Shown piece after piece: positions 1,255 through 61,600 of a stretch of DNA of 64,000 bases (within the stretch, counting starts at the first letter, position 1; each line of letters starts with the position of its first letter). The notes beneath the pieces were generated by a model that ran no database searches, had not been told where the DNA came from, and saw only the letters and a program-made list of their open reading frames with translations. Location of the stretch: assembly GCA_964252035.1 (NCBI GenBank), contig OZ176202.1, one strand, 5' to 3'. Made by a program: the position numbers and the translations under genes. The DNA comes from Podarcis erhardii (Eukaryota).

Positions 1255-1367
1255 CTCCTGCCAACCTAGCAGTTCGCCGCTCCCTAGGCCAATAAAGCGA
1301 GATGAGCACCGCAACCCCAGAGTCAGCCATGTCTGGACCTAATGGTCAGGGGTCCCTTTACCTTTAC
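1255..1367 (+). mobile_element. 5'-truncated, internally deleted Sauria SINE
   Basis: ctcctgccaacctagcagttcg joined to ...ccaataaagcgagatgagc...tacctttacc tail; TSD ctatagtgtcatt (1232-1244/1368-1380). Confidence 0.8.
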
Positions 1368-12920: not shown

Positions 12921-13283
12921 GGGACACGGGTGGCGCTGTGGGTAAAACCTCAGTGCCTAGGACCTGCCGATCGTATGGTTGGCGGTTCGAATCCCCGCGG
13001 CGGGGTGAGCTCCCGTCTTTTGGTCCCAGCTCCTGCTCACCTAGCAGTTCGAAAGCACCCCTAAGTGCAAATAGATAAATAGGTACCGCTTTATAGCGGG
13101 AAGGTAAACGGCGTTTCCGTGTGCTGCGCTGGTGCTGGCTCGCCAGAGCAGTTTTGTCATGCTGGCCACGTGACCCGGAAGTGTCTCCGGACAGCGCTGG
13201 CCCCCGGCCTCTTAAGTGAGATGGGCGCACAACCCTAGAGTCGGACACGACTGACCTGTACGGGCAGGGGTACCTTTGCCTTT
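12921..13283 (+). mobile_element. Full-length Sauria SINE
   Basis: tRNA-like head gggacacgggtggcgctgtgg...ggttcgaatcccc; accttt tail; 12-bp TSD aacttaacagag (12907-12918/13284-13295). Confidence 0.95.

Positions 13284-54594: not shown

Positions 54595-54641
<47 letters not shown>
54595..54641. repeat. (GATA)~12 microsatellite
   Basis: Direct reading. Confidence 0.95.
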
Positions 54642-55060
54642 GAAGCTGCTCCTTTGCTTTTTCTCCCCCAATATCCTAAAGAGTGTTCATAGGGAGGTTG
54701 ATGGTGCTGTGGTCTAAACCACTGAGCCTCTTGGGCTTGCTGATCAGAAAGTTGGCGGTTTGAATCCCCACAATGGAGTGAGCTCCTGTTGCTCTGTCCC
54801 AGCTCCTGCCAACCTAGCAGTTCGAAAGCACACCAGTGCAAGTAGATAAATAGGTACCACAGCAACGGGAAGGTAAACCGCGTTTATGTGTGCTCTGGCT
54901 TCCATCATGGTGTTTCGTTGTGCCAGAAGCGGTTTAGTCATGCTGGTCACAAGACCTGGAAAGCTATCTGTGGACAAATGCCAGCTCCCTCGGCCTGAAA
55001 GCGAGATGAGCACCACAACTCCATAGTCGCCTTTGACTGGACTTAACCATCCAGGGATCC

Positions 55061-55297
55061 AGTTACAGATAGGTAGCCGTGTTGGTCTGCCATGGTCAAA
55101 ACAAAATAAAAAAAATCCTTCCAGTAGCACCTTAAAGACCAACTGAGTTAGTTCTAGGTATGAGCTTTCGTGTGCATGCACACTTCTTCAGATACACGTG
55201 TATCTGAAGAAGTGTGCATGCACACGAAAGCTCATACCTAGAACTAACTCAGTTGGTCTTTAAGGTGCTACTGGAAGGATTTTTTTTATTTTGTTTT
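55061..55297. mobile_element. Penelope-like element 3' end, as an antisense copy plus a 100-bp inverted copy (perfect 200-bp palindrome 55098-55297)
   Basis: 13-bp TSD catccagggatcc (55048-55060/55298-55310); arms checked base by base; hammerhead core typical of PLE pseudo-LTRs. Confidence 0.8.
55200..55237 (+). ncRNA. Minimal type I hammerhead ribozyme motif (mirror copy on - at 55158-55195)
   Basis: Stem I GTAT/ATAC; CTGAAGA core 55204-55210; extra A; stem II GTGTGC-AT-GCACAC; GAAA 55226-55229; palindromic stem III AGCT; predicted cleavage after C55233. Confidence 0.75.
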
Positions 55298-55358
55298 CAT
55301 CCAGGGATCCTTTACCTTACCTTTATCTTAAATATTGTTCTTTCTGTTTCTTAAATAG

Positions 55359-55497
55359 AAACTAAAGCAAGAAGTGAAGAATCTCCGTTTGTCTGCCCTC
55401 ACATTCTCCAGAGATGTCCAGCATCACGGCAAAACCTACCTTGGTCAGATTTTGGCTGCTGTCCAAAGGCTTCAGATGCATAATGAGGCTATGCAAA
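55359..55497 (+). CDS. KIF25: KIF25 exon 4 KLKQEVKNLRLSALTFSRDVQ...HNEAMQ(T)
   Basis: aatAG acceptor, A|GTAAGA donor; 139 nt open, phase 0 to 1; coiled-coil character. Confidence 0.8.
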
Positions 55498-55794
55498 GTA
55501 AGAGATGAGCACCAGTGAAAGCTTATCAGGCTGGCATCTAAGGCGCTTGAACCATATGAGCAGTGCCACCGTTGGTATCAGCTCACAGAATTTGCAGTGA
55601 AGGTTCTGGCTTTGGGTTGAGGGGCAACTTTTTACCGCTGCCAGGACTTTACACGAAGCAGGTGTACTGCACCAAGAGCATACTGCATCTCTGGTCCACT
55701 CAAGAGTGGATGGGTTGTCTTCCTGTCCCCTTAGAATAAGAGTTACAGGGGTCAGGCAAAAGCACCTAGCCATAACTGAAGGTAGTGATAAGGT

Positions 55795-57360
55795 TAAAGC
55801 TTACTGGAAAATGATATATAATGAAATGAAAAGGATGTTTAAAATAACCTTTGTAAAAAACCCAGAAACTTTTCTTTTGGGAATTATAGGGAAAGAACTT
55901 CCTAAAATATATAGAAACTTATTAATGTATGCTACTACAGCGGCAAGAATGTTACTTGCCCCAAAATGGAAAGAGGCAGAAGTCCCAGCAAAGGAAGAAT
56001 GGATACAAAAACTTACGGAATATGCAGAAATGGCAAATCTCAGCGGAAGAAATGGTTTGTTGAATATTTACAGATAAATTATAAACAGATAAAAACATAG
56101 GCAGGATTATTATAATAACCTGCAGTTTCATAAGAGTATATATTTAAAGAAGATGAATAAATGAGCAAATTACCGTATTTTTCGCCCCATAGGACGCACT
56201 TTTTCCCCTCCAAAAATGAAGGGGAAATCTGGGTGCGTCCTATGGGGCGAATGCAGGCTTTCGCTGAAGCTTGGAGAGCGAGAGGGGTCGGTGTGCACCG
56301 ACCCCTCTCGCTCTCCAGGCATCAGGAAGACATCCATAGCCTAGGCAGCCCTGAAAGCAGAGCGCCCGGCACTTCGGGAGCACATCCACAGCCTGGGCAG
56401 CCCTGCAGGAGGTCCGGCAGGGCTGTCTAGGCTGCGGATAGCAGCCTGCTTCCCGGAGCGTCGGGCGCCCTGAAAGCAGAGCGCCCGGCGCTTCGGGAGC
56501 ACATCCGCAGCCTGGGCGGCCTTGCAGGAGGTCCGGCAGGGCTGTCTAGGCTGCGGATAGCAGCCTGCTTCCCTGGAGCGTCGGGCGCCCTGAAAGCAGA
56601 GCACCCGGCGCTTAGGGAGCGCATCCGCAGCCTGGGCAGCCCTGTGGGAGTTCTCCGCAGGGCTCCCCATGCTGCGGATAGCAGCCTGCCGCCCCGCGCG
56701 CCAGACAGACATCCGCAGCGTGGGGAGCCCTGCAGGAGTTCCCCGCAGGGTTCCCCACACTGCGGATAGCAGCCTGCCGCCCGGCGGGCGGGAGGGGCGC
56801 CCTGAAGCAGAGCGCCCCGTGCGCCGGGCAGACATCCGCAGCGTGGGGAGCCCTGCAGGAGTTCCCCGCAGGGCTCCCCACGCTGCGGATAGCAGCCTGC
56901 CGCCCCGCGCGCCAGACAGACATCCGCAGCGTGGGGAGCCCTGCAGGAGTTCCCCGCAGGGTTCCCCACACTGCGGATAGCAGCCTGCCGCCTGAGGCAG
57001 ACATCGGCCAGCCCCACAAGCTTGGGGGACAGCAGGGAGGCGCAGCATCATTCCTCGACCTGGTTCAGTTTCCCCGACCTGCTTTTGGGGGGGAAATAAA
57101 GGAAAAATTATTTTCCTTTATTTCCCCCCAAAAAAACTAGGCGCGTCCTATGGGACGGAGCGTCCTATGGGACGAAAAATACGGTAAGTTAATTTGGATA
57201 TGTAGAAGATATTAAAAACAAATTTAAGGAACCGCAGAAAGGGGGAAGGAAGTCAGGTTTTGAAATGCCAAAATGATTGTAAAATTAGTGAAATGTGTAA
57301 AATTAATGAAATGTATAAACTTGAAAAGTATAAATTAAAAAATTAATTTATTTTTTAAAA
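55795..57360 (+). mobile_element. 5'-truncated L1-clade LINE (ORF2 C-terminus + 3'UTR) split by a MITE
   Basis: KAYWKMIY...PETFLLGI...AARMLLAPKWK...P...W (ORF2 C-terminal region); 18-bp TSD tgaaggtagtgataaggt/tgaaagtagtgatgaggt (55777-55794/57361-57378). Confidence 0.8.
56173..57184. mobile_element. Non-autonomous Tc1/mariner (Tc2-type TIR) element, 1012 bp, with internal GC-rich hairpin array
   Basis: TA|ccgtatttttcgccccataggacgc...gcgtcctatgggacgaaaaatacgg|TA; 25-bp TIR with 1 mismatch. Confidence 0.88.
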
Positions 57361-57852
57361 TGAAAGTAGTGATGAGGTGGAGCATGTTTCTATGGAAACT
57401 GGACAATGGGCCAGGTCTGGGCATCCTGTGTTTTTTTAAATGATGCTGGAGAATGCTGTCTATGGCTGCCAGCCACAATGCCAATGGTCTTCCTTCACTG
57501 TCAGAGGCAGTAGGCCTCTGAAAACCAGTTGCACAAGTTGTCACAAGTGAGGAGAGCACTGTTGTATTCATGTCAGCTGCTGTGAGAACAGAATGCTAGC
57601 TATATGGGCCTTTTGCCGGACTGAGCAGGGCTCTTTTTATGGCCTTCCATTAGACTCAAATTCCTAATTGCACCAATCAGAATTGTCAAAAGTCTGGGAT
57701 GATGGGAGTTGTAGTCCAGCGACATGTGAAGGACCACAGCTGCCTTACCTTTAATATAAGCATTGCCCAGGTACTTCGGATGCTCTCAGGCCCATGCCTG
57801 AGGGGGAAATAGCCTAACAGTTCTGTGAACATTTGTGAAAATGTCTTTTCAG

Positions 57853-57956
57853 CCTTTCAGACCAGAGCCTTTGAACTTGAGCAGTCCTTGCATGAAGTAA
57901 ATGAGCGATACCAGAAAGAAAAACAAAGGAGAAAAGTACTTCATAACAGTTTAATT
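57853..57956 (+). CDS. KIF25: KIF25 exon 5 FQTRAFELEQSLHEVNERYQKEKQRRKVLHNSLI (kinesin-14 neck)
   Basis: tttcAG acceptor, ATT|GTAAGT donor; 104 nt, phase 1 to 0; E..RRK.LHN.L neck motif. Confidence 0.9.
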
Positions 57957-58535
57957 GTAAGTGTCCTGGTAACTGAGTCTGCAATGTCTTTTAAAAGATC
58001 TGCATAAATATGAGAGTTGCCAGTGTGCAACTTGAGATGACTTTCCAGTTCCTTTTTATCAGTTCCTGTATCTGCATAGGAGGCTGTGCTCATGGCTTCT
58101 CTTGCCTGCTCTTTCCAAGGCCTGTTGCCTTCCCTTTATTGCCAGCTGCCTCTTCAAACTGTGGGGCTGTTTAAGGAAACGGTTGGGTTGTCTGAATTGC
58201 AACCTTTTAAAATATTTATTGACTTTATGTGCTGTGTAAGAACATTTACTTTCCTTAGTGCATCAGTCAGATTACAGTGGCTAAAAAAAAATGGGGAAAG
58301 AATGGCAGATTAAGGAGATTAAGACCATCATCTTTCATCAAAATCCTGGTCTGGGGTAAAACCAACTTGGACACTTTTTCACTCTCTGTGGTAATTTAAT
58401 GAGGCAGAGCTTCAATAGTCATGAGGCAGGATAGCAACACCACAACTTTCTGTATTTTCTTACCGCATCTGAGTCACACCATTTCGTTCACGAGTTTTTA
58501 AAACTGCTGACTATGTTTCTGCGTTGCATCCTCAG

Positions 58536-58624
58536 GAACTAAGGGGAAATATCAGAGTCCATTGCAGGATCCGCCCACTGTTACCATTTGATACACCTCC
58601 TGGAGAGTCAGACTTAAAAGACAG
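58536..58624 (+). CDS. KIF25: KIF25 exon 6 ELRGNIRVHCRIRPLLPFDTPPGESDLKD(R) (motor domain start)
   Basis: ctcAG acceptor, AG|GTAATT donor; ELRGNIRV.CR.RP is the C-terminal-motor kinesin signature; gene identity from AFDN-KIF25 synteny. Confidence 0.9.
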
Positions 58625-61600
58625 GTAATTTATTTCATGAATATAGTTATGTTAACTGACACTCGGATGTCTTTCCGGCGCCAGGAAAAGACCTTTTTAT
58701 TTTCCTAGGCTTTTAAACTTTTGTTGGTCTGTTTTATTTGGGTGTTGCTTTTATAGAGTTGCTGTTTTTGGCTGAATTTATGGGTGTTAGATATTTATTG
58801 TAAGCCACGCAGATAATGTGTTTGAAAGCTTGGGTACAAATCTGAATCATAAACAGTCTAATTGTTCTTCTATTTGAAAATGTTGGTTAGATTCTGCATT
58901 TTTACATACTTTGGAAGACATTTCCACTTTACAAGTAGAATCTGCAACAAACTTGCATTTTATCCTCACACCCTAACAGGAATGTTCCTGTTAAGAATTC
59001 CAGCCAGTCAGATGTGTTCTCCTCCAAGGCAGTAGTGGGATCAAGCAAGCCAGTTTACTCCTCTGTCTCCCTGTTGTCCATTTTTCCTCAACCAACATTA
59101 AACATTTTTTAGCTCTTGCAAGCCATTGAGCACGATGAACCCTCTTTTGGCTGAGGAGGTTTTTGGGGGGGTGGAGGGGGAGGTTGTCATGTCCCTTTTG
59201 GTTTTTAAAAATGTTTTGTATTTTTCTGTGCTCATGGGCTCATCCAGGCATGTTAATAGTTCCCTCTTGCTTCTCCAATTCTGTAGGCACTCAACCATCT
59301 GAATTCTCTGTTAGAGGAAATTAGGGTGATTTTTACTCATGTCTCCTTTTATAGCCTTCCAGCTTCTTAGATCTGAAGGATTCTGACATCACCATTGTCG
59401 GGTTCAGATTACAGGAGGTAACAACGTGTTTGGGCTCTGACACGCAAGCCCTGCCCCCAGCATCCCCATACATGTGGCCCTCCCCACTCCACCCCCAACC
59501 TTCCTCAGGCTGAACAAGGAAGAGCTGCAAGAGGGCTTTTATTTGCCTTTCCTTGGAATGTCTTGCATGACTGGGGACCCTGTTTCATGCCCCTGTCTCC
59601 ATTCATTGATTCAACGTTTTGTCTTTATCTTCTAATTAGCTTTCACGAAGGTGGAAGCGCCTCTGAAACATCCTTTTGTATCCTCTGAGCTTGGCAGATC
59701 TTGTGCATAACTCAGTATGGAAGATGCTGTGAGGGCAGAAAAGAAAGCTGAGATGCTTTCTGCCTGGCTTCCTCGCATAATCCTCCCCGTACTCCAGGCT
59801 TGGTGGGGCCCCAGGAAACTATTTGGGGGGCTGAACAAAGCCCTTTCCAGACTGCTAGCTATCTTTTTTCCTTTAAAGAAAGTAATGGGACTTTTCTCCC
59901 CAATGAATCTGTGAGTACACTATCAATACAGACAATGAAAGATGGAGCCACAAAAGTGATATTGAAAGTAAGCAATTCCCCTTCCTTATTGGCTCTTCCA
60001 GGTGACCTGCTTGTTGAGCATGTATCCTGATGTTCATGAAAGCTACATCATAACTGGTCTTTTGTTCTGATTTGTTTATCGTCTGGTTAGATGACAGTGA
60101 TCAATCATCCCGCATTCATCCTGATTTCCTTACAGGGTGCTTATACATCTTCCCATTAATCATGTCTTCCTTTCACACACTTTAATGCACATCCTTGTCA
60201 CTTTGCAAACTGCAAGAAGTCCCATTCTTTTCGAAAGTGGATCTCTTGGGTGACAGAGCACTTTAATATACTTTAATTGTGCAAACTTGAATCCCTTCTG
60301 CAAAACATTGACAGTCTGGAGGCACCCAGAATGACTATATTGAGTGTTTATGTTTTTCTTACGTTGCTCACCAACCTGTCTTGCTGTTCAGGTTCCATTA
60401 ACTCAGACACCGTTTTCCCATGTCACATCCCTCTCGAAGGCTGAAAGAACAGAAGGGATAGGCTGATGTAGCAAGCCTATACTGCCACTTTATAATCTGT
60501 TGCTTTGTAATCAACCCTGATGTAGGGAAATCAATCCCAGAAAGCCACAAGAAGTGTCTCTTTATGTTTGCTTGTATATGGGTTTAAGAAGGTTGTATTT
60601 ATTTCTGTTTGCTAAGGTTTGGGAAGGGGGGGGGGGAGGAATAAAATACTGCTGTGATTTGAAAAGCAATTACAACTAAGAGGAGAGCTGTGTAATCTAG
60701 GATTTTTATGGCTCCAAGGAACACGATTGTTTTTCTGAGGCTCTCCAAATAGTGGTACGTTTATCTGCAAAACTGCAGCACAAAGCAGAGTGGTCAGTGC
60801 TCCAGAACAGGTCTAAGCATCCTGTGTTTCTCCGCTCTCCCCATACATTTCTCAGCAAAACTTTCTTTTCTCCCAGCACTTACACAGGTAGGTCCACACA
60901 GCTACAGCTGCAAACTCACACTTCCATTTCCTTTAACGTAGTGCTCTGTTCTTCATGTTGTCCAAGTTGCTAGAGCTCACACTGTGTTATGAGCTGAGGG
61001 TGGAATTCAGTGTAGCGCTAAGGTGTATGCATGTGAGGAACGAGGTCCCTTGGCACCACAGGATTGTCCCCTCTCTTCTCCCTCTGCCACCTAAACTTGT
61101 CCTGGGCATTCCCTCACATCTTCAGGAGCAGATTTAGTGGGGAAGGATGGGGGAGAGCGGACCTTGTTTTCCATATGCAACAATTAGTTGACTCCTGCCC
61201 ATAGTTTGAGCTTGCATGTTTATTATTTTTCATTTGGAAATAGCAGCTGGGGGTGGGCATTGATCAGAATTCAGATCATAGAGGGGATAGAAGGTTTTTA
61301 AAGCCATTTTAACCCACAAACCATGGTCCTGACAAAGATCCTCCCCACTTGCTGTTTGTTTCTTTCCAGTAACTGCTCCCAACAGTAGAGGAGTTTCGTG
61401 AGCAAATTCTGAGACGGTTGCTGATGACCCAAATGGGTTGGGTAACATCTCTCTTCACATGATGGTGGCAGGAGAAAAGCATCTATACCCCACGCTTCAG
61501 CCTGAAAAGCTCTCAGGGTGGCTTGCATATCAATAAAAACAACACTGCCCTGCCCTCTGTCTAAAAAGGAAGGAAGAGGAAAACATGCATACTCCACAAC

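What the first reader, a model, noticed from the sequence alone, without database searches (positions are those of the whole stretch)
55048..55310. Perfect spacer-less 200-bp palindrome nested in a SINE tail, 61 nt before a KIF25 exon
Seen: 55098-55197 and 55198-55297 are exact reverse complements around CAC|GTG. The 237-bp insert sits in a Sauria SINE and is flanked by an exact 13-bp duplication, so it is recent. The SINE tail next to it lies in the pyrimidine-rich stretch of the exon-4 acceptor. Established: long spacer-less palindromes form cruciforms, are unstable, and as RNA are ADAR/Dicer substrates; inverted 3' ends are typical of Penelope insertions. Inference: this may be a polymorphic insertion that affects exon-4 inclusion or yields small RNAs.
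Basis: partly seen in the sequence, partly recalled or inferred. Interest (0 to 1): 0.7.

Follow-up and report, generated by a model that had tools for sequence, protein, structure and literature searches.

The report
Penelope retroelement head-to-head palindromic insertion
A perfect 200-bp DNA palindrome in a lizard kinesin-gene intron is real, and it is the typical scar of a heavily truncated Penelope-like retroelement inserted as two inverted copies; this is a known insertion type, and no effect on the gene has been shown.

Summary
Positions 55098-55197 and 55198-55297 are exact reverse complements with no spacer. The 237-bp insert (55061-55297) sits in the 3' tail of a SINE and is flanked by an exact 13-bp target-site duplication.

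Each arm carries a minimal Penelope-type hammerhead ribozyme. One arm is 37 nt longer, matching the one-sided "tail" described for Penelope-like elements (PLEs). The layout (hammerhead, then two alternative outer ends 37 nt apart) matches the two reverse-transcription start sites mapped in vitro for the Anolis PLE. That protein nicks and extends both target strands.

My best reading is that both target strands primed cDNA, one from each start site, and the two cDNAs were joined head-to-head. The PLE identity is well supported; this mechanism is inferred.

Contigs show the family at roughly 10^4-10^5 copies in several related lizards. This copy's subfamily makes up 30-40% of copies in the source organism and under 0.5% in two relatives, so the insertion is probably lineage-specific.

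The exon 61 nt downstream is real and belongs to a kinesin-14 gene. KIF25 orthology and the exon number were not tested. Effects on splicing, RNA editing or small RNAs were not tested either.

Unchecked first-reader notes of this scan list more than 20 similar palindromes elsewhere in this genome. This is a new member of a known kind.

The parts
54690..55047 (+). Body of the host SINE (tRNA-derived, Sauria-type), upstream of the insertion point
   Evidence: Paralogues at 45381-45081(-), 12931-13243(+) and 1279-1342(+) are 72-80% identical. Summed contig depth is up to about 5 million against 12-18 for single-copy sequence. A B-box-like GGTTTGAATCC is present. ARAGORN calls no tRNA.
55048..55060 (.). 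Left copy of the 13-bp target-site duplication CATCCAGGGATCC
55061..55097 (-). 37-nt 'tail': extra 3'-terminal PLE sequence, present on the left arm only and AC-rich in sense orientation
   Evidence: The left arm is 137 nt and the right arm 100 nt. The composition is A11 C12 G7 T7, and its AGACCAAC pairs with GUUGGUCU upstream. The literature describes a 30-40 bp one-sided tail.
55098..55197 (-). Left palindrome arm: PLE unit nt 1-100, sense on the - strand
55198..55297 (+). Right palindrome arm: PLE unit nt 1-100, sense on the + strand (same sense as the host gene)
   Evidence: The last 27 nt plus the TSD are confirmed in an X1 contig.
55200..55237 (+). Minimal type-I hammerhead motif: GUAU-CUGAAGA-A-GUGUG(CAUG)CACAC-GAAA-GC-UC|AUAC, with the predicted cut after 55233
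   Evidence: The descriptor hits here and 0 times in 100 shuffled windows. Criteria are from PMC4209133. The unit's MFE fold forms helices I and II.
55158..55195 (-). Mirror copy of the hammerhead motif on the - strand
55298..55310 (.). Right copy of the 13-bp target-site duplication
55311..55330 (+). Remainder of the SINE 3' tail (TTTACC-type repeats); the end point is approximate
   Evidence: Alignment with three paralogues.
55280..55304 (+). Acceptor-like string created by the insertion: an 18-nt T-rich run from the arm end followed by CATCCAG|G of the TSD (inference only)
   Evidence: Sequence. The 54-nt in-frame extension it would give has TAA at 55329-31. In the RNA hairpin the T-run is paired with the A-run of the other arm.
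55359..55497 (+). 139-nt coding exon of the host kinesin-14 gene (coiled-coil part); only frame 1 is open
   Evidence: A contig from a probable RNA run covers only 55357-55497. Translation. AG and GT.
57825..58007 (+). Open frame holding a downstream exon that ends in the kinesin-14 neck motif ...QRRKVLHNSLI
58536..58625 (+). Start of the kinesin-14 motor (ELRGNIRVHCRIRPLLPFD...)
   Evidence: The best PDB matches are the Kar3, KIFC1 and Ncd neck/motor starts, E = 5e-4.

Best explanation
The 237 bp are a single, evolutionarily young insertion of a high-copy Penelope-like retroelement (PLE), cut down to its 3'-terminal module. That module holds the minimal hammerhead and the roughly 100-137 nt between it and the sites where the PLE reverse transcriptase starts. 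The insertion consists of two inverted copies of this module joined head-to-head.

Proposed mechanism (inferred). The PLE endonuclease nicked both strands of the SINE tail 13 bp apart. Each 3' end primed reverse transcription of PLE RNA without homology. The + strand end used the distal start site (137 nt, including the 37-nt tail). The - strand end used the proximal start site (100 nt). Both cDNAs ran to the same point 2-6 nt upstream of the hammerhead core. One was then extended on the other by an end-to-end template jump or by annealing of self-complementary ends. This gives a spacer-less perfect palindrome flanked by a 13-bp duplication.

Function. It is a by-product of transposition, not a host feature. 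In the kinesin pre-mRNA it should fold into a 100-bp perfect hairpin that buries the sense hammerhead and the new T-rich acceptor-like string. The most likely effect on the gene is therefore small.

Shown: the anatomy, the TSD, the hammerhead motif, the high copy number, the subfamily distribution and the reality of the exon. Inferred: dual-strand priming, the nature of the turn-around point and neutrality.
For: The anatomy is exact. The TSD is real because SINE paralogues carry one copy of the site.

[quoted passage not shown] It occurs only in the two arms and in none of 100 shuffles.

PLE insertions are described as 5'-truncated, often with an adjacent inverted copy, and with a 30-40 bp tail at one end only (PMC8557442). 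Head-to-head inverted pLTRs with a palindrome at the junction, a 31-bp optional tail and 8-10 bp TSDs are described in rotifers (PMC3846280).

The Anolis PLE protein cleaves and extends both strands. It starts reverse transcription at two internal, non-homologous sites whose distance equals the tail (PMC11167929). In that element the cut site is at +30 and the tail spans about +85 to +119. The starts therefore lie about 55 and 89 nt after the cut; here they lie 64 and 101 nt after it.

Both insert/target junctions show zero microhomology (sequence), as expected if both are initiation events. The tail is AC-rich and forms a stem with upstream sequence, as reported for the Anolis start region.

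Summed contig depth over the arms is 0.5-1.9 million against 12-18 for single-copy sequence in three organisms, so the family is very high-copy. G at 55094, G at 55145 and C at 55250 are carried by 41%, 33% and 29% of that depth in the source organism, and by 0.2-0.4% in two relatives.

The X1 contig covering 55271-55818 has 0 differences at single-copy depth.
Against: No Rfam hammerhead model matches, which is expected for a motif without helix III. No ribozyme activity was tested.

The insert has no open reading frame, and no RT/GIY-YIG gene or second copy lies in the window. The family assignment therefore rests on architecture and the hammerhead, not on homology to a curated PLE consensus. 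No Repbase or Dfam library was available. The Anolis Poseidon sequence shows the same layout but no obvious sequence identity by eye.

The two start sites are assigned by analogy with a different PLE family studied in vitro.

For two independent cDNAs to end at the same nucleotide, a defined template 5' end or strong stop is needed. This was not shown. The scan's unchecked notes list sister palindromes with arms of 44-219 bp, so no single stop point holds for the family.

The palindrome centre and the left junction were not seen in independent data.
Confidence: 0.62

Rival explanations
1. Same PLE origin, different mechanism. Only one target strand primed cDNA, from the distal site. After 137 nt the cDNA 3' end snapped back and primed on itself (self-priming). 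It copied 100 nt of itself before being joined to the other target end.
For: Arkhipova and colleagues interpret the frequent palindromes at inverted PLE junctions as self-priming (PMC3846280). Self-copying naturally gives two arms that meet at the same nucleotide wherever synthesis stopped. This fits the variable arm lengths noted elsewhere in this genome.
Against: An intramolecular fold-back needs a loop of a few nucleotides and some terminal self-complementarity, so it should leave a short asymmetric spacer. There is none here. It gives no reason for copy-back to stop exactly 37 nt short of the first arm's end, at the tail boundary. It also gives no reason for that junction to lack microhomology. 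The in vitro work shows extension from both strands.
Confidence: 0.26
2. Assembly artefact. A fold-back or chimeric long read, or mis-assembly of a repeat, created a palindrome that does not exist in the genome.
For: PLE inverted structures are known to trouble assemblies. The centre was not confirmed by independent reads, because only k=31 contigs were available and both arms share their words.
Against: An exact 13-bp TSD brackets the unit. The right junction (sense arm end, TSD, unique flank) is in an X1 contig at single-copy depth with 0 differences. In the assembly the left junction has the element pointing the other way. If both junctions are as assembled, an inversion point must lie between them. 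The ends fall at PLE-typical boundaries. Many similar structures are noted across the genome.
Confidence: 0.04
3. A foldback or MITE-type DNA transposon with 100-bp terminal inverted repeats. Alternatively, a later inverted duplication of a simple 137-bp insertion caused by a DNA replication template switch.
For: Long inverted repeats flanked by a TSD are what foldback elements and MITEs look like.
Against: The termini are not symmetric: there is a 37-nt extension on one side only. There is no internal unique sequence. The arms are a PLE hammerhead module. A later duplication would have to end exactly at the element/target junction without disturbing the TSD. That junction also coincides with the PLE tail boundary.
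Confidence: 0.03
4. A host-used element: a hairpin RNA or miRNA-like precursor, or a regulated self-cleaving ribozyme acting on the kinesin pre-mRNA.
For: The RNA would form a 100-bp perfect duplex at -198 kcal/mol. Generic miRNA-precursor models score up to 75 bits. The sense hammerhead lies in the pre-mRNA strand.
Against: All Rfam scores are far below the gathering thresholds and are the same on both strands, as for any perfect hairpin. The sequence is one of about 10^4-10^5 repeat copies. Minimal PLE hammerheads need a partner copy and cleave poorly. Here the motif is locked by its antisense arm. The insertion appears lineage-specific, so there is no evidence of conservation.
Confidence: 0.03

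Closest known systems
[quoted passage not shown]
   Same: A minimal hammerhead in the terminal repeat, heavy 5' truncation, head-to-head inverted copies with a palindromic junction, a 30-40 bp tail on one end only, a short TSD around the whole unit, and very high copy number.
   Different: Here both copies are cut down to 100-137 nt, and the inverted junction is perfect with no overlap or spacer. No RT/GIY-YIG ORF is attached, and the clade could not be assigned. Unlike Poseidon_Ac, no ORF starts at hammerhead helix II; all three frames have stops.
Poseidon_Ac (PAc) of Anolis carolinensis, the only PLE reconstituted in vitro (Frangieh et al. 2024, PMC11167929)
   Same: The order is hammerhead, then about 55-65 nt, then the first start site, then a 34-37 nt tail, then the second start site. 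The start region is AC-rich and structured. Priming shows no homology to the target. Both target strands are used.
   Different: The PAc work did not report the joined head-to-head product. The target here (C^TTTACC and G^GTTAAG) is only loosely like the ATT preference reported for PAc.
Animal non-LTR retrozymes and Schistosoma Sm-alpha-type hammerhead repeats (non-autonomous PLE derivatives)
   Same: Short, non-coding, hammerhead-bearing, PLE-related and very abundant. The unit here has no ORF.
   Different: Retrozymes are defined by tandem head-to-tail arrays that yield circular RNAs. This locus is a single head-to-head pair with a TSD. The 2026 preprint reports retrozymes as depleted in introns, whereas this copy is intronic.
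L1 'twin priming' inversions
   Same: Both target strands prime reverse transcription, giving an insertion with an inverted part and a TSD (my own knowledge).
   Different: Twin priming inverts a different, upstream part of the RNA, so it does not give a palindrome. Here both arms copy the same 100 nt.

Membership tests
Penelope-like element (EN+ PLE) insertion | Minimal type-I hammerhead in the terminal repeat: CUGANGA core, extra nucleotide between 9 and 10.1, G10.1-C11.1, GAAA, palindromic 15.2-16.2 | tested here: met
   The descriptor hits 55200-55237(+) and 55158-55195(-) only, with 0 hits in 100 shuffled windows. Criteria are from PMC4209133.
Penelope-like element (EN+ PLE) insertion | Inverted 5'-truncated copy adjacent to the unit, head-to-head, with a palindrome at the junction | tested here: met
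   Arms of 100 nt, 100% complementary, 0 spacer. Criteria.
Penelope-like element (EN+ PLE) insertion | [quoted passage not shown] | tested here: met
   A 37-nt extension (55061-55097) on the left arm only. Criteria.
Penelope-like element (EN+ PLE) insertion | Target-site duplication around the whole complex unit | tested here: met
   A 13-bp exact TSD; the empty-site state is seen in SINE paralogues.
Penelope-like element (EN+ PLE) insertion | Single ORF with a telomerase-like RT and a GIY-YIG endonuclease | tested here: not met
   The 137-nt unit has stops in all three frames, and there is no other copy in the window. This is expected for a copy truncated to its terminal module, so the copy is at best a non-autonomous or truncated derivative. 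The autonomous partner was not found.
Penelope-like element (EN+ PLE) insertion | Sequence homology to a curated PLE consensus (Repbase/Dfam) | not testable with these tools
   No repeat library is on hand. Poseidon_Ac shows the same layout but no clear identity by eye. No paper prints this sequence.
Hammerhead ribozyme, Rfam families (Hammerhead_1, _3, HH9, HH10, _II) | Score at or above the family's gathering threshold | tested here: not met
   No hammerhead model matched even at E <= 1, and there were no gathering-level hits in the window. The motif lacks a closed helix III, as PLE minimal hammerheads do.
Hammerhead ribozyme (function) | Self-cleavage at the predicted site (after 55233) | not testable with these tools
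   This needs an in vitro assay with a dimeric construct. Published PLE minimal hammerheads cleave weakly or need protein.
Sauria-type tRNA-derived SINE (host repeat) | tRNA-related head with A and B boxes, a unique body, a LINE-like tail of short repeats, and high copy number | tested here: inconclusive
   A B-box-like GGTTTGAATCC is present, and paralogue contigs carry GGTTCGAATCC. There are three paralogues in the window and a TTTACC-type tail. ARAGORN calls no tRNA. I made no comparison with the published consensus; the name rests on my recollection of that family.
Foldback / MITE DNA transposon | Symmetric terminal inverted repeats reaching both ends of the element | tested here: not met
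   The left end carries 37 nt with no counterpart on the right.
microRNA precursor families (MIR8562, MIR1222, mir-559 and others) | Score at or above the gathering threshold, with a strand-specific match | tested here: not met
   The best score is 75 bits against a threshold of 211. Scores are equal or nearly equal on both strands.
Kinesin-14 (KIF25 as claimed) | Neck motif followed by a C-terminal motor start | tested here: met
   ...QRRKVLHNSLI at about 57939 and ELRGNIRVHCRIRP at 58536-58625. The top PDB hits are Kar3, KIFC1 and Ncd.
Kinesin-14 (KIF25 as claimed) | Orthology to KIF25 specifically, and the exon number | not tested
   The only support is an unchecked scan note that afadin lies upstream in the window, plus my knowledge that AFDN and KIF25 are neighbours in vertebrates. 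The Atlas search on the exon gave nothing.

The most novel reading that the evidence does not exclude
This lacertid PLE subfamily is a very recent, possibly still active, mass producer of perfect DNA palindromes, with on the order of 10^4 copies gained in one lineage. Each insertion would be a natural record of target-primed reverse transcription from both target strands, using two start sites and a cDNA-to-cDNA jump. If so, a census of these insertions would settle how PLEs build their inverted structures, which is an open question. It would also give a natural system for asking how a vertebrate genome tolerates thousands of spacer-less palindromes and the perfect intronic hairpin RNAs they encode.
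Probability: 0.3. Interest if true: 0.6.

Novelty: new member of a known kind. Interest (0 to 1): 0.35.

Why it matters
On its own, this locus is an ordinary though unusually clean PLE insertion scar.

Its value is as evidence. The two arm ends lie 37 nt apart and neither junction shows microhomology. This is the in vivo footprint expected from the in vitro finding that a PLE protein extends both target strands from two internal start sites. The steps that turn such intermediates into the inverted structures of PLEs have not been validated experimentally.

The read data also point to a lineage-specific burst of the subfamily, equal to roughly 17,000-36,000 copies by summed depth. That makes this lizard group a good place to study PLE integration, palindrome stability and hairpin-RNA load.

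For the kinesin gene, the practical questions are whether the 100-bp intronic hairpin is edited or diced, and whether the T-rich acceptor-like string is ever used.

Tried and rejected
1. Rfam scans at E-value and gathering thresholds gave only sub-threshold, strand-symmetric miRNA and sRNA hairpin matches and no hammerhead model. I rejected these as generic hairpin hits.
2. A search for further copies of the unit in the window found none.
3. Two metagenome-contig scans, one with an exact and one with a degenerate block of the unit, found nothing useful. The 71 hits of the second share only the seed and are chance matches.
4. An ESM Atlas search on the 46-aa exon gave no usable hit. Pfam on the neighbouring ORFs gave nothing significant.
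5. ARAGORN on the SINE head found no tRNA.
6. A literature search for the hammerhead sequence string found no paper.
7. I tried to read presence or absence of the insertion in organisms B and C from contigs. The joint 55045->55300 (skip 254) looked like an empty allele. I rejected it because it also occurs in four contigs of the source organism and fits consensus SINE paralogues.
   - The unique-flank contigs of B and C stop at 55301 and at 55298 (the latter with 3 unfitting letters). They do not run 27 nt into the arm as in the source organism. This suggests empty sites but does not prove it.
8. I considered that the palindrome centre marks a fixed 5' end of the template, because several contigs join inverted pieces directly to 55198-55200. 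I did not adopt this for two reasons. The alignment to a palindromic reference biases joints to that point. The scan's notes also list sister palindromes with arms of 44-219 bp.
The comparison is positional and by eye.

Full report
**1. Observation**

The repeat finder gives one inverted repeat: arms 55098-55197 and 55198-55297, 100 nt each, 100% complementary, with no base between them. A script confirmed this. The centre reads GATACAC|GTGTATC.

The 13-mer CATCCAGGGATCC occurs at 55048-55060 and again at 55298-55310. It brackets a 237-bp insert, 55061-55297.

The host sequence is a high-copy tRNA-derived SINE. Three paralogues in the window align across the insertion point and carry one equivalent of the 13-mer, which runs straight into the TTTACCTTT tail. 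In each of three genomic runs, more than 100 paralogous contigs do the same (loose ends at 55060). The duplication is therefore a true target-site duplication (TSD).

As single-stranded DNA the stretch folds at -126 kcal/mol, against -26 +/- 3.5 for shuffles, z = -28.5. As RNA it folds at -198 kcal/mol.

**2. What the insert is**

The left part, read on the - strand, is a contiguous 137-nt unit. The right arm repeats its first 100 nt on the + strand. So two copies of the same unit lie head-to-head, and one of them is 37 nt longer at its 3' end.

Nucleotides 3-40 of the unit read GUAU-CUGAAGA-A-GUGUG(CAUG)CACAC-GAAA-GC-UC|AUAC. Cervera and de la Pena list the traits of metazoan PLE minimal hammerheads (PMC4209133), and this motif has all of them:
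- the conserved core;
- the G10.1-C11.1 pair;
- a long helix II;
- a palindromic 15.2-16.2 pair, which implies action as a dimer.

A descriptor built from these traits hits only 55200-55237 (+) and 55158-55195 (-) in the 64-kb window. It hit none of 100 shuffled windows. The free-energy fold of the unit forms helices I and II unaided.

Rfam's hammerhead models do not match. This is expected, because the motif has no closed helix III. The many miRNA-family matches are far below threshold and equal or nearly equal on both strands. They reflect only the perfect hairpin.

**3. Comparison with known PLE anatomy**

Three sources describe this arrangement.
- Craig et al. describe PLE insertions as strongly 5'-truncated. 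They often carry an inverted 5'-truncated copy next to the unit and a 30-40 bp tail at one end only (PMC8557442).
- Arkhipova et al. describe head-to-head inverted pLTRs with palindromes at the junction, an optional 31-bp tail on one of them, and 8-10 bp TSDs around the whole unit (PMC3846280).
- Frangieh et al. reconstituted the Anolis element PAc. The protein cleaves and extends both target strands. Reverse transcription starts at two adjacent internal sites with no homology to the target, and the distance between them equals the tail (PMC11167929).

In PAc the hammerhead cut site is at +30 and the tail spans about +85 to +119. The two starts therefore lie about 55 and 89 nt after the cut, and the tail is about 34 nt. 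In this insert the predicted cut is after unit nt 36 and the arms end at nt 100 and nt 137. That places the ends 64 and 101 nt after the cut, with a 37-nt tail.

The tail is AC-rich, and its AGACCAAC pairs with GUUGGUCU upstream. This resembles the AC-rich stem-loop reported for PAc. Neither insert/target junction shows any microhomology.

The PAc sequence itself is not obviously similar by eye.

**4. Mechanism**

*Best reading.* The endonuclease nicked both strands 13 bp apart, leaving 3' overhangs. The + strand end primed cDNA from the distal start, giving the 137-nt left part. The - strand end primed from the proximal start, giving the 100-nt right arm. Both cDNAs are antisense. To complete the duplex, one must be extended on the other from its 3' end. 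This gives a spacer-less palindrome if both stopped at the same nucleotide.

This reading explains three things: the one-sided tail, the sharp homology-free junctions and the TSD.

Its weak point is the common stop. That needs a defined template 5' end or a strong stop, which I could not show. Several contigs join inverted pieces directly to 55198-55200, but alignment to a palindromic reference biases joints to that point. The scan's unchecked notes also list sister palindromes with arms of 44 to 219 bp.

*Main rival.* Self-priming (snap-back) of a single cDNA, favoured in PMC3846280, explains coincident arm ends at any position. It predicts a small central spacer, and it gives no reason for the second arm to stop exactly at the tail boundary.

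I rate the PLE identity at about 0.9 and dual-strand priming at about 0.6.

**5. Reads**

Only assembled contigs were available, so starts, ends, editing and rare alleles cannot be read.

*Source organism.* Run X1 matches the window. A 548-nt contig at single-copy depth covers 55271-55818 with no difference. It confirms the right junction: 27 nt of arm, the TSD and the exon. The centre and the left junction were not seen independently. In the assembly the two junctions have the element pointing outwards in opposite orientations. If the left junction is as assembled, an inversion point must lie between them.

*Copy number.* Summed contig depth over the arms is 0.5-1.9 million, against 12-18 for single-copy sequence, in organisms A, B and C. 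That is on the order of 10^4-10^5 copy equivalents.

*Subfamily.* This copy's bases at three positions mark a subfamily. The table gives the share of depth that carries this copy's base.

| Position (base in this copy) | Organism A | Organisms B and C |
|---|---|---|
| 55094 (G) | 41% | 0.2-0.3% |
| 55145 (G) | 33% | 0.2-0.3% |
| 55250 (C) | 29% | 0.4% |

The subfamily therefore expanded after A split from B and C. Their unique flanks differ from A by 8 in about 517 nt, roughly 1.5%. This is better evidence of youth than the perfect identity. Zero differences in 113 paired sites only bounds pairwise divergence below about 2.65% (95%).

*Presence in B and C.* This could not be settled. Their flank contigs stop at 55301 and at 55298 (the latter with 3 unfitting letters). 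They do not run 27 nt into the arm as in A, which suggests empty sites. The apparent empty-site joint 55045->55300 also occurs in A and fits consensus SINE paralogues, so I set it aside.

**6. Gene context**

A 2666-nt contig from a probable RNA run of a related organism covers only 55357-55497 of the stretch. AG lies at 55357-8 and GT at 55498-9, and only frame 1 is open. The exon is therefore 55359-55497, 61 nt after the insert.

Downstream + strand frames read ...QRRKVLHNSLI (about 57939) and ELRGNIRVHCRIRP (58536-58625). The latter's best matches among solved structures are the neck/motor starts of Kar3, KIFC1 and Ncd. The gene is a kinesin-14.

KIF25 is plausible, given an unchecked note that afadin lies upstream. 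Orthology and the exon number were not tested.

**7. Likely consequences (inference)**

- The insertion lies upstream of the branch-point zone and the pyrimidine tract, so the core acceptor signals are intact.
- It does create an acceptor-like string: an 18-nt T-rich run followed by CATCCAG|G, with the AG at 55303-4. Using it would add 54 in-frame nt containing a TAA at 55329-31.
- In the RNA hairpin that T-run is paired with the A-run of the other arm, and the sense hammerhead is paired with its antisense copy. Both should therefore be masked.
- A 100-bp perfect intronic duplex is a plausible ADAR or Dicer substrate, and a 200-bp perfect palindrome is a plausible site of DNA instability (established knowledge). 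Nothing here tests either.

**8. Novelty**

The arrangement is documented for PLEs, and the scan's unchecked notes list more than 20 similar palindromes elsewhere in this genome. This locus is a new, very clean member of a known kind.

Two points have some wider interest. One is the in vivo footprint matching the two-start-site, both-strands model. The other is the apparent lineage-specific burst of the subfamily.

Noticed in passing
window 55061-55297 (read depth): The PLE module is present at roughly 10^4-10^5 copy equivalents in three related organisms. A subfamily marked by G at 55094 and G at 55145 accounts for 30-40% of that depth in the source organism and under 0.5% in the other two. 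This points to a lineage-specific burst of tens of thousands of copies since about 1.5% sequence divergence.
   Followed up: partly
window 55088-55143 joined to 55198-55200 (tables 5 and 5c): Several contigs from three organisms join inverted pieces of the unit, truncated at different points (often just inside the tail boundary), directly to the start of the sense unit. This is the 'inverted 5'-truncated copy next to the unit' pattern. Whether 55198-55200 is a preferred 5' boundary or an alignment bias is open.
   Followed up: no
window 54595-54641: A perfect (GATA)n microsatellite of 11.8 units lies about 50 bp upstream of the SINE head.
   Followed up: no
window 56348-56992: A GC-rich minisatellite in the next intron has periods of about 88, 119 and 211 bp and 86-94% matches. 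It lies in the window's most GC-rich 2 kb (GC 0.52). Its long ORFs on both strands are probably products of the repeat.
   Followed up: partly
window 55740-56340: Another interspersed repeat has summed contig depth about 10^3-10^4 times single-copy. It overlaps a 123-aa ORF at 55706-56077 whose product has no significant Pfam match. From memory, its sequence recalls the C-terminal part of a LINE ORF2.
   Followed up: partly
window 55047/55048 and 55060/55311 (empty-site coordinates): The two inferred nick sites both precede a T-rich, AT-rich string: C^TTTACC on the + strand and G^GTTAAG on the - strand. This agrees loosely with the AT-rich cleavage preference reported for PLE endonucleases.
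   Followed up: no
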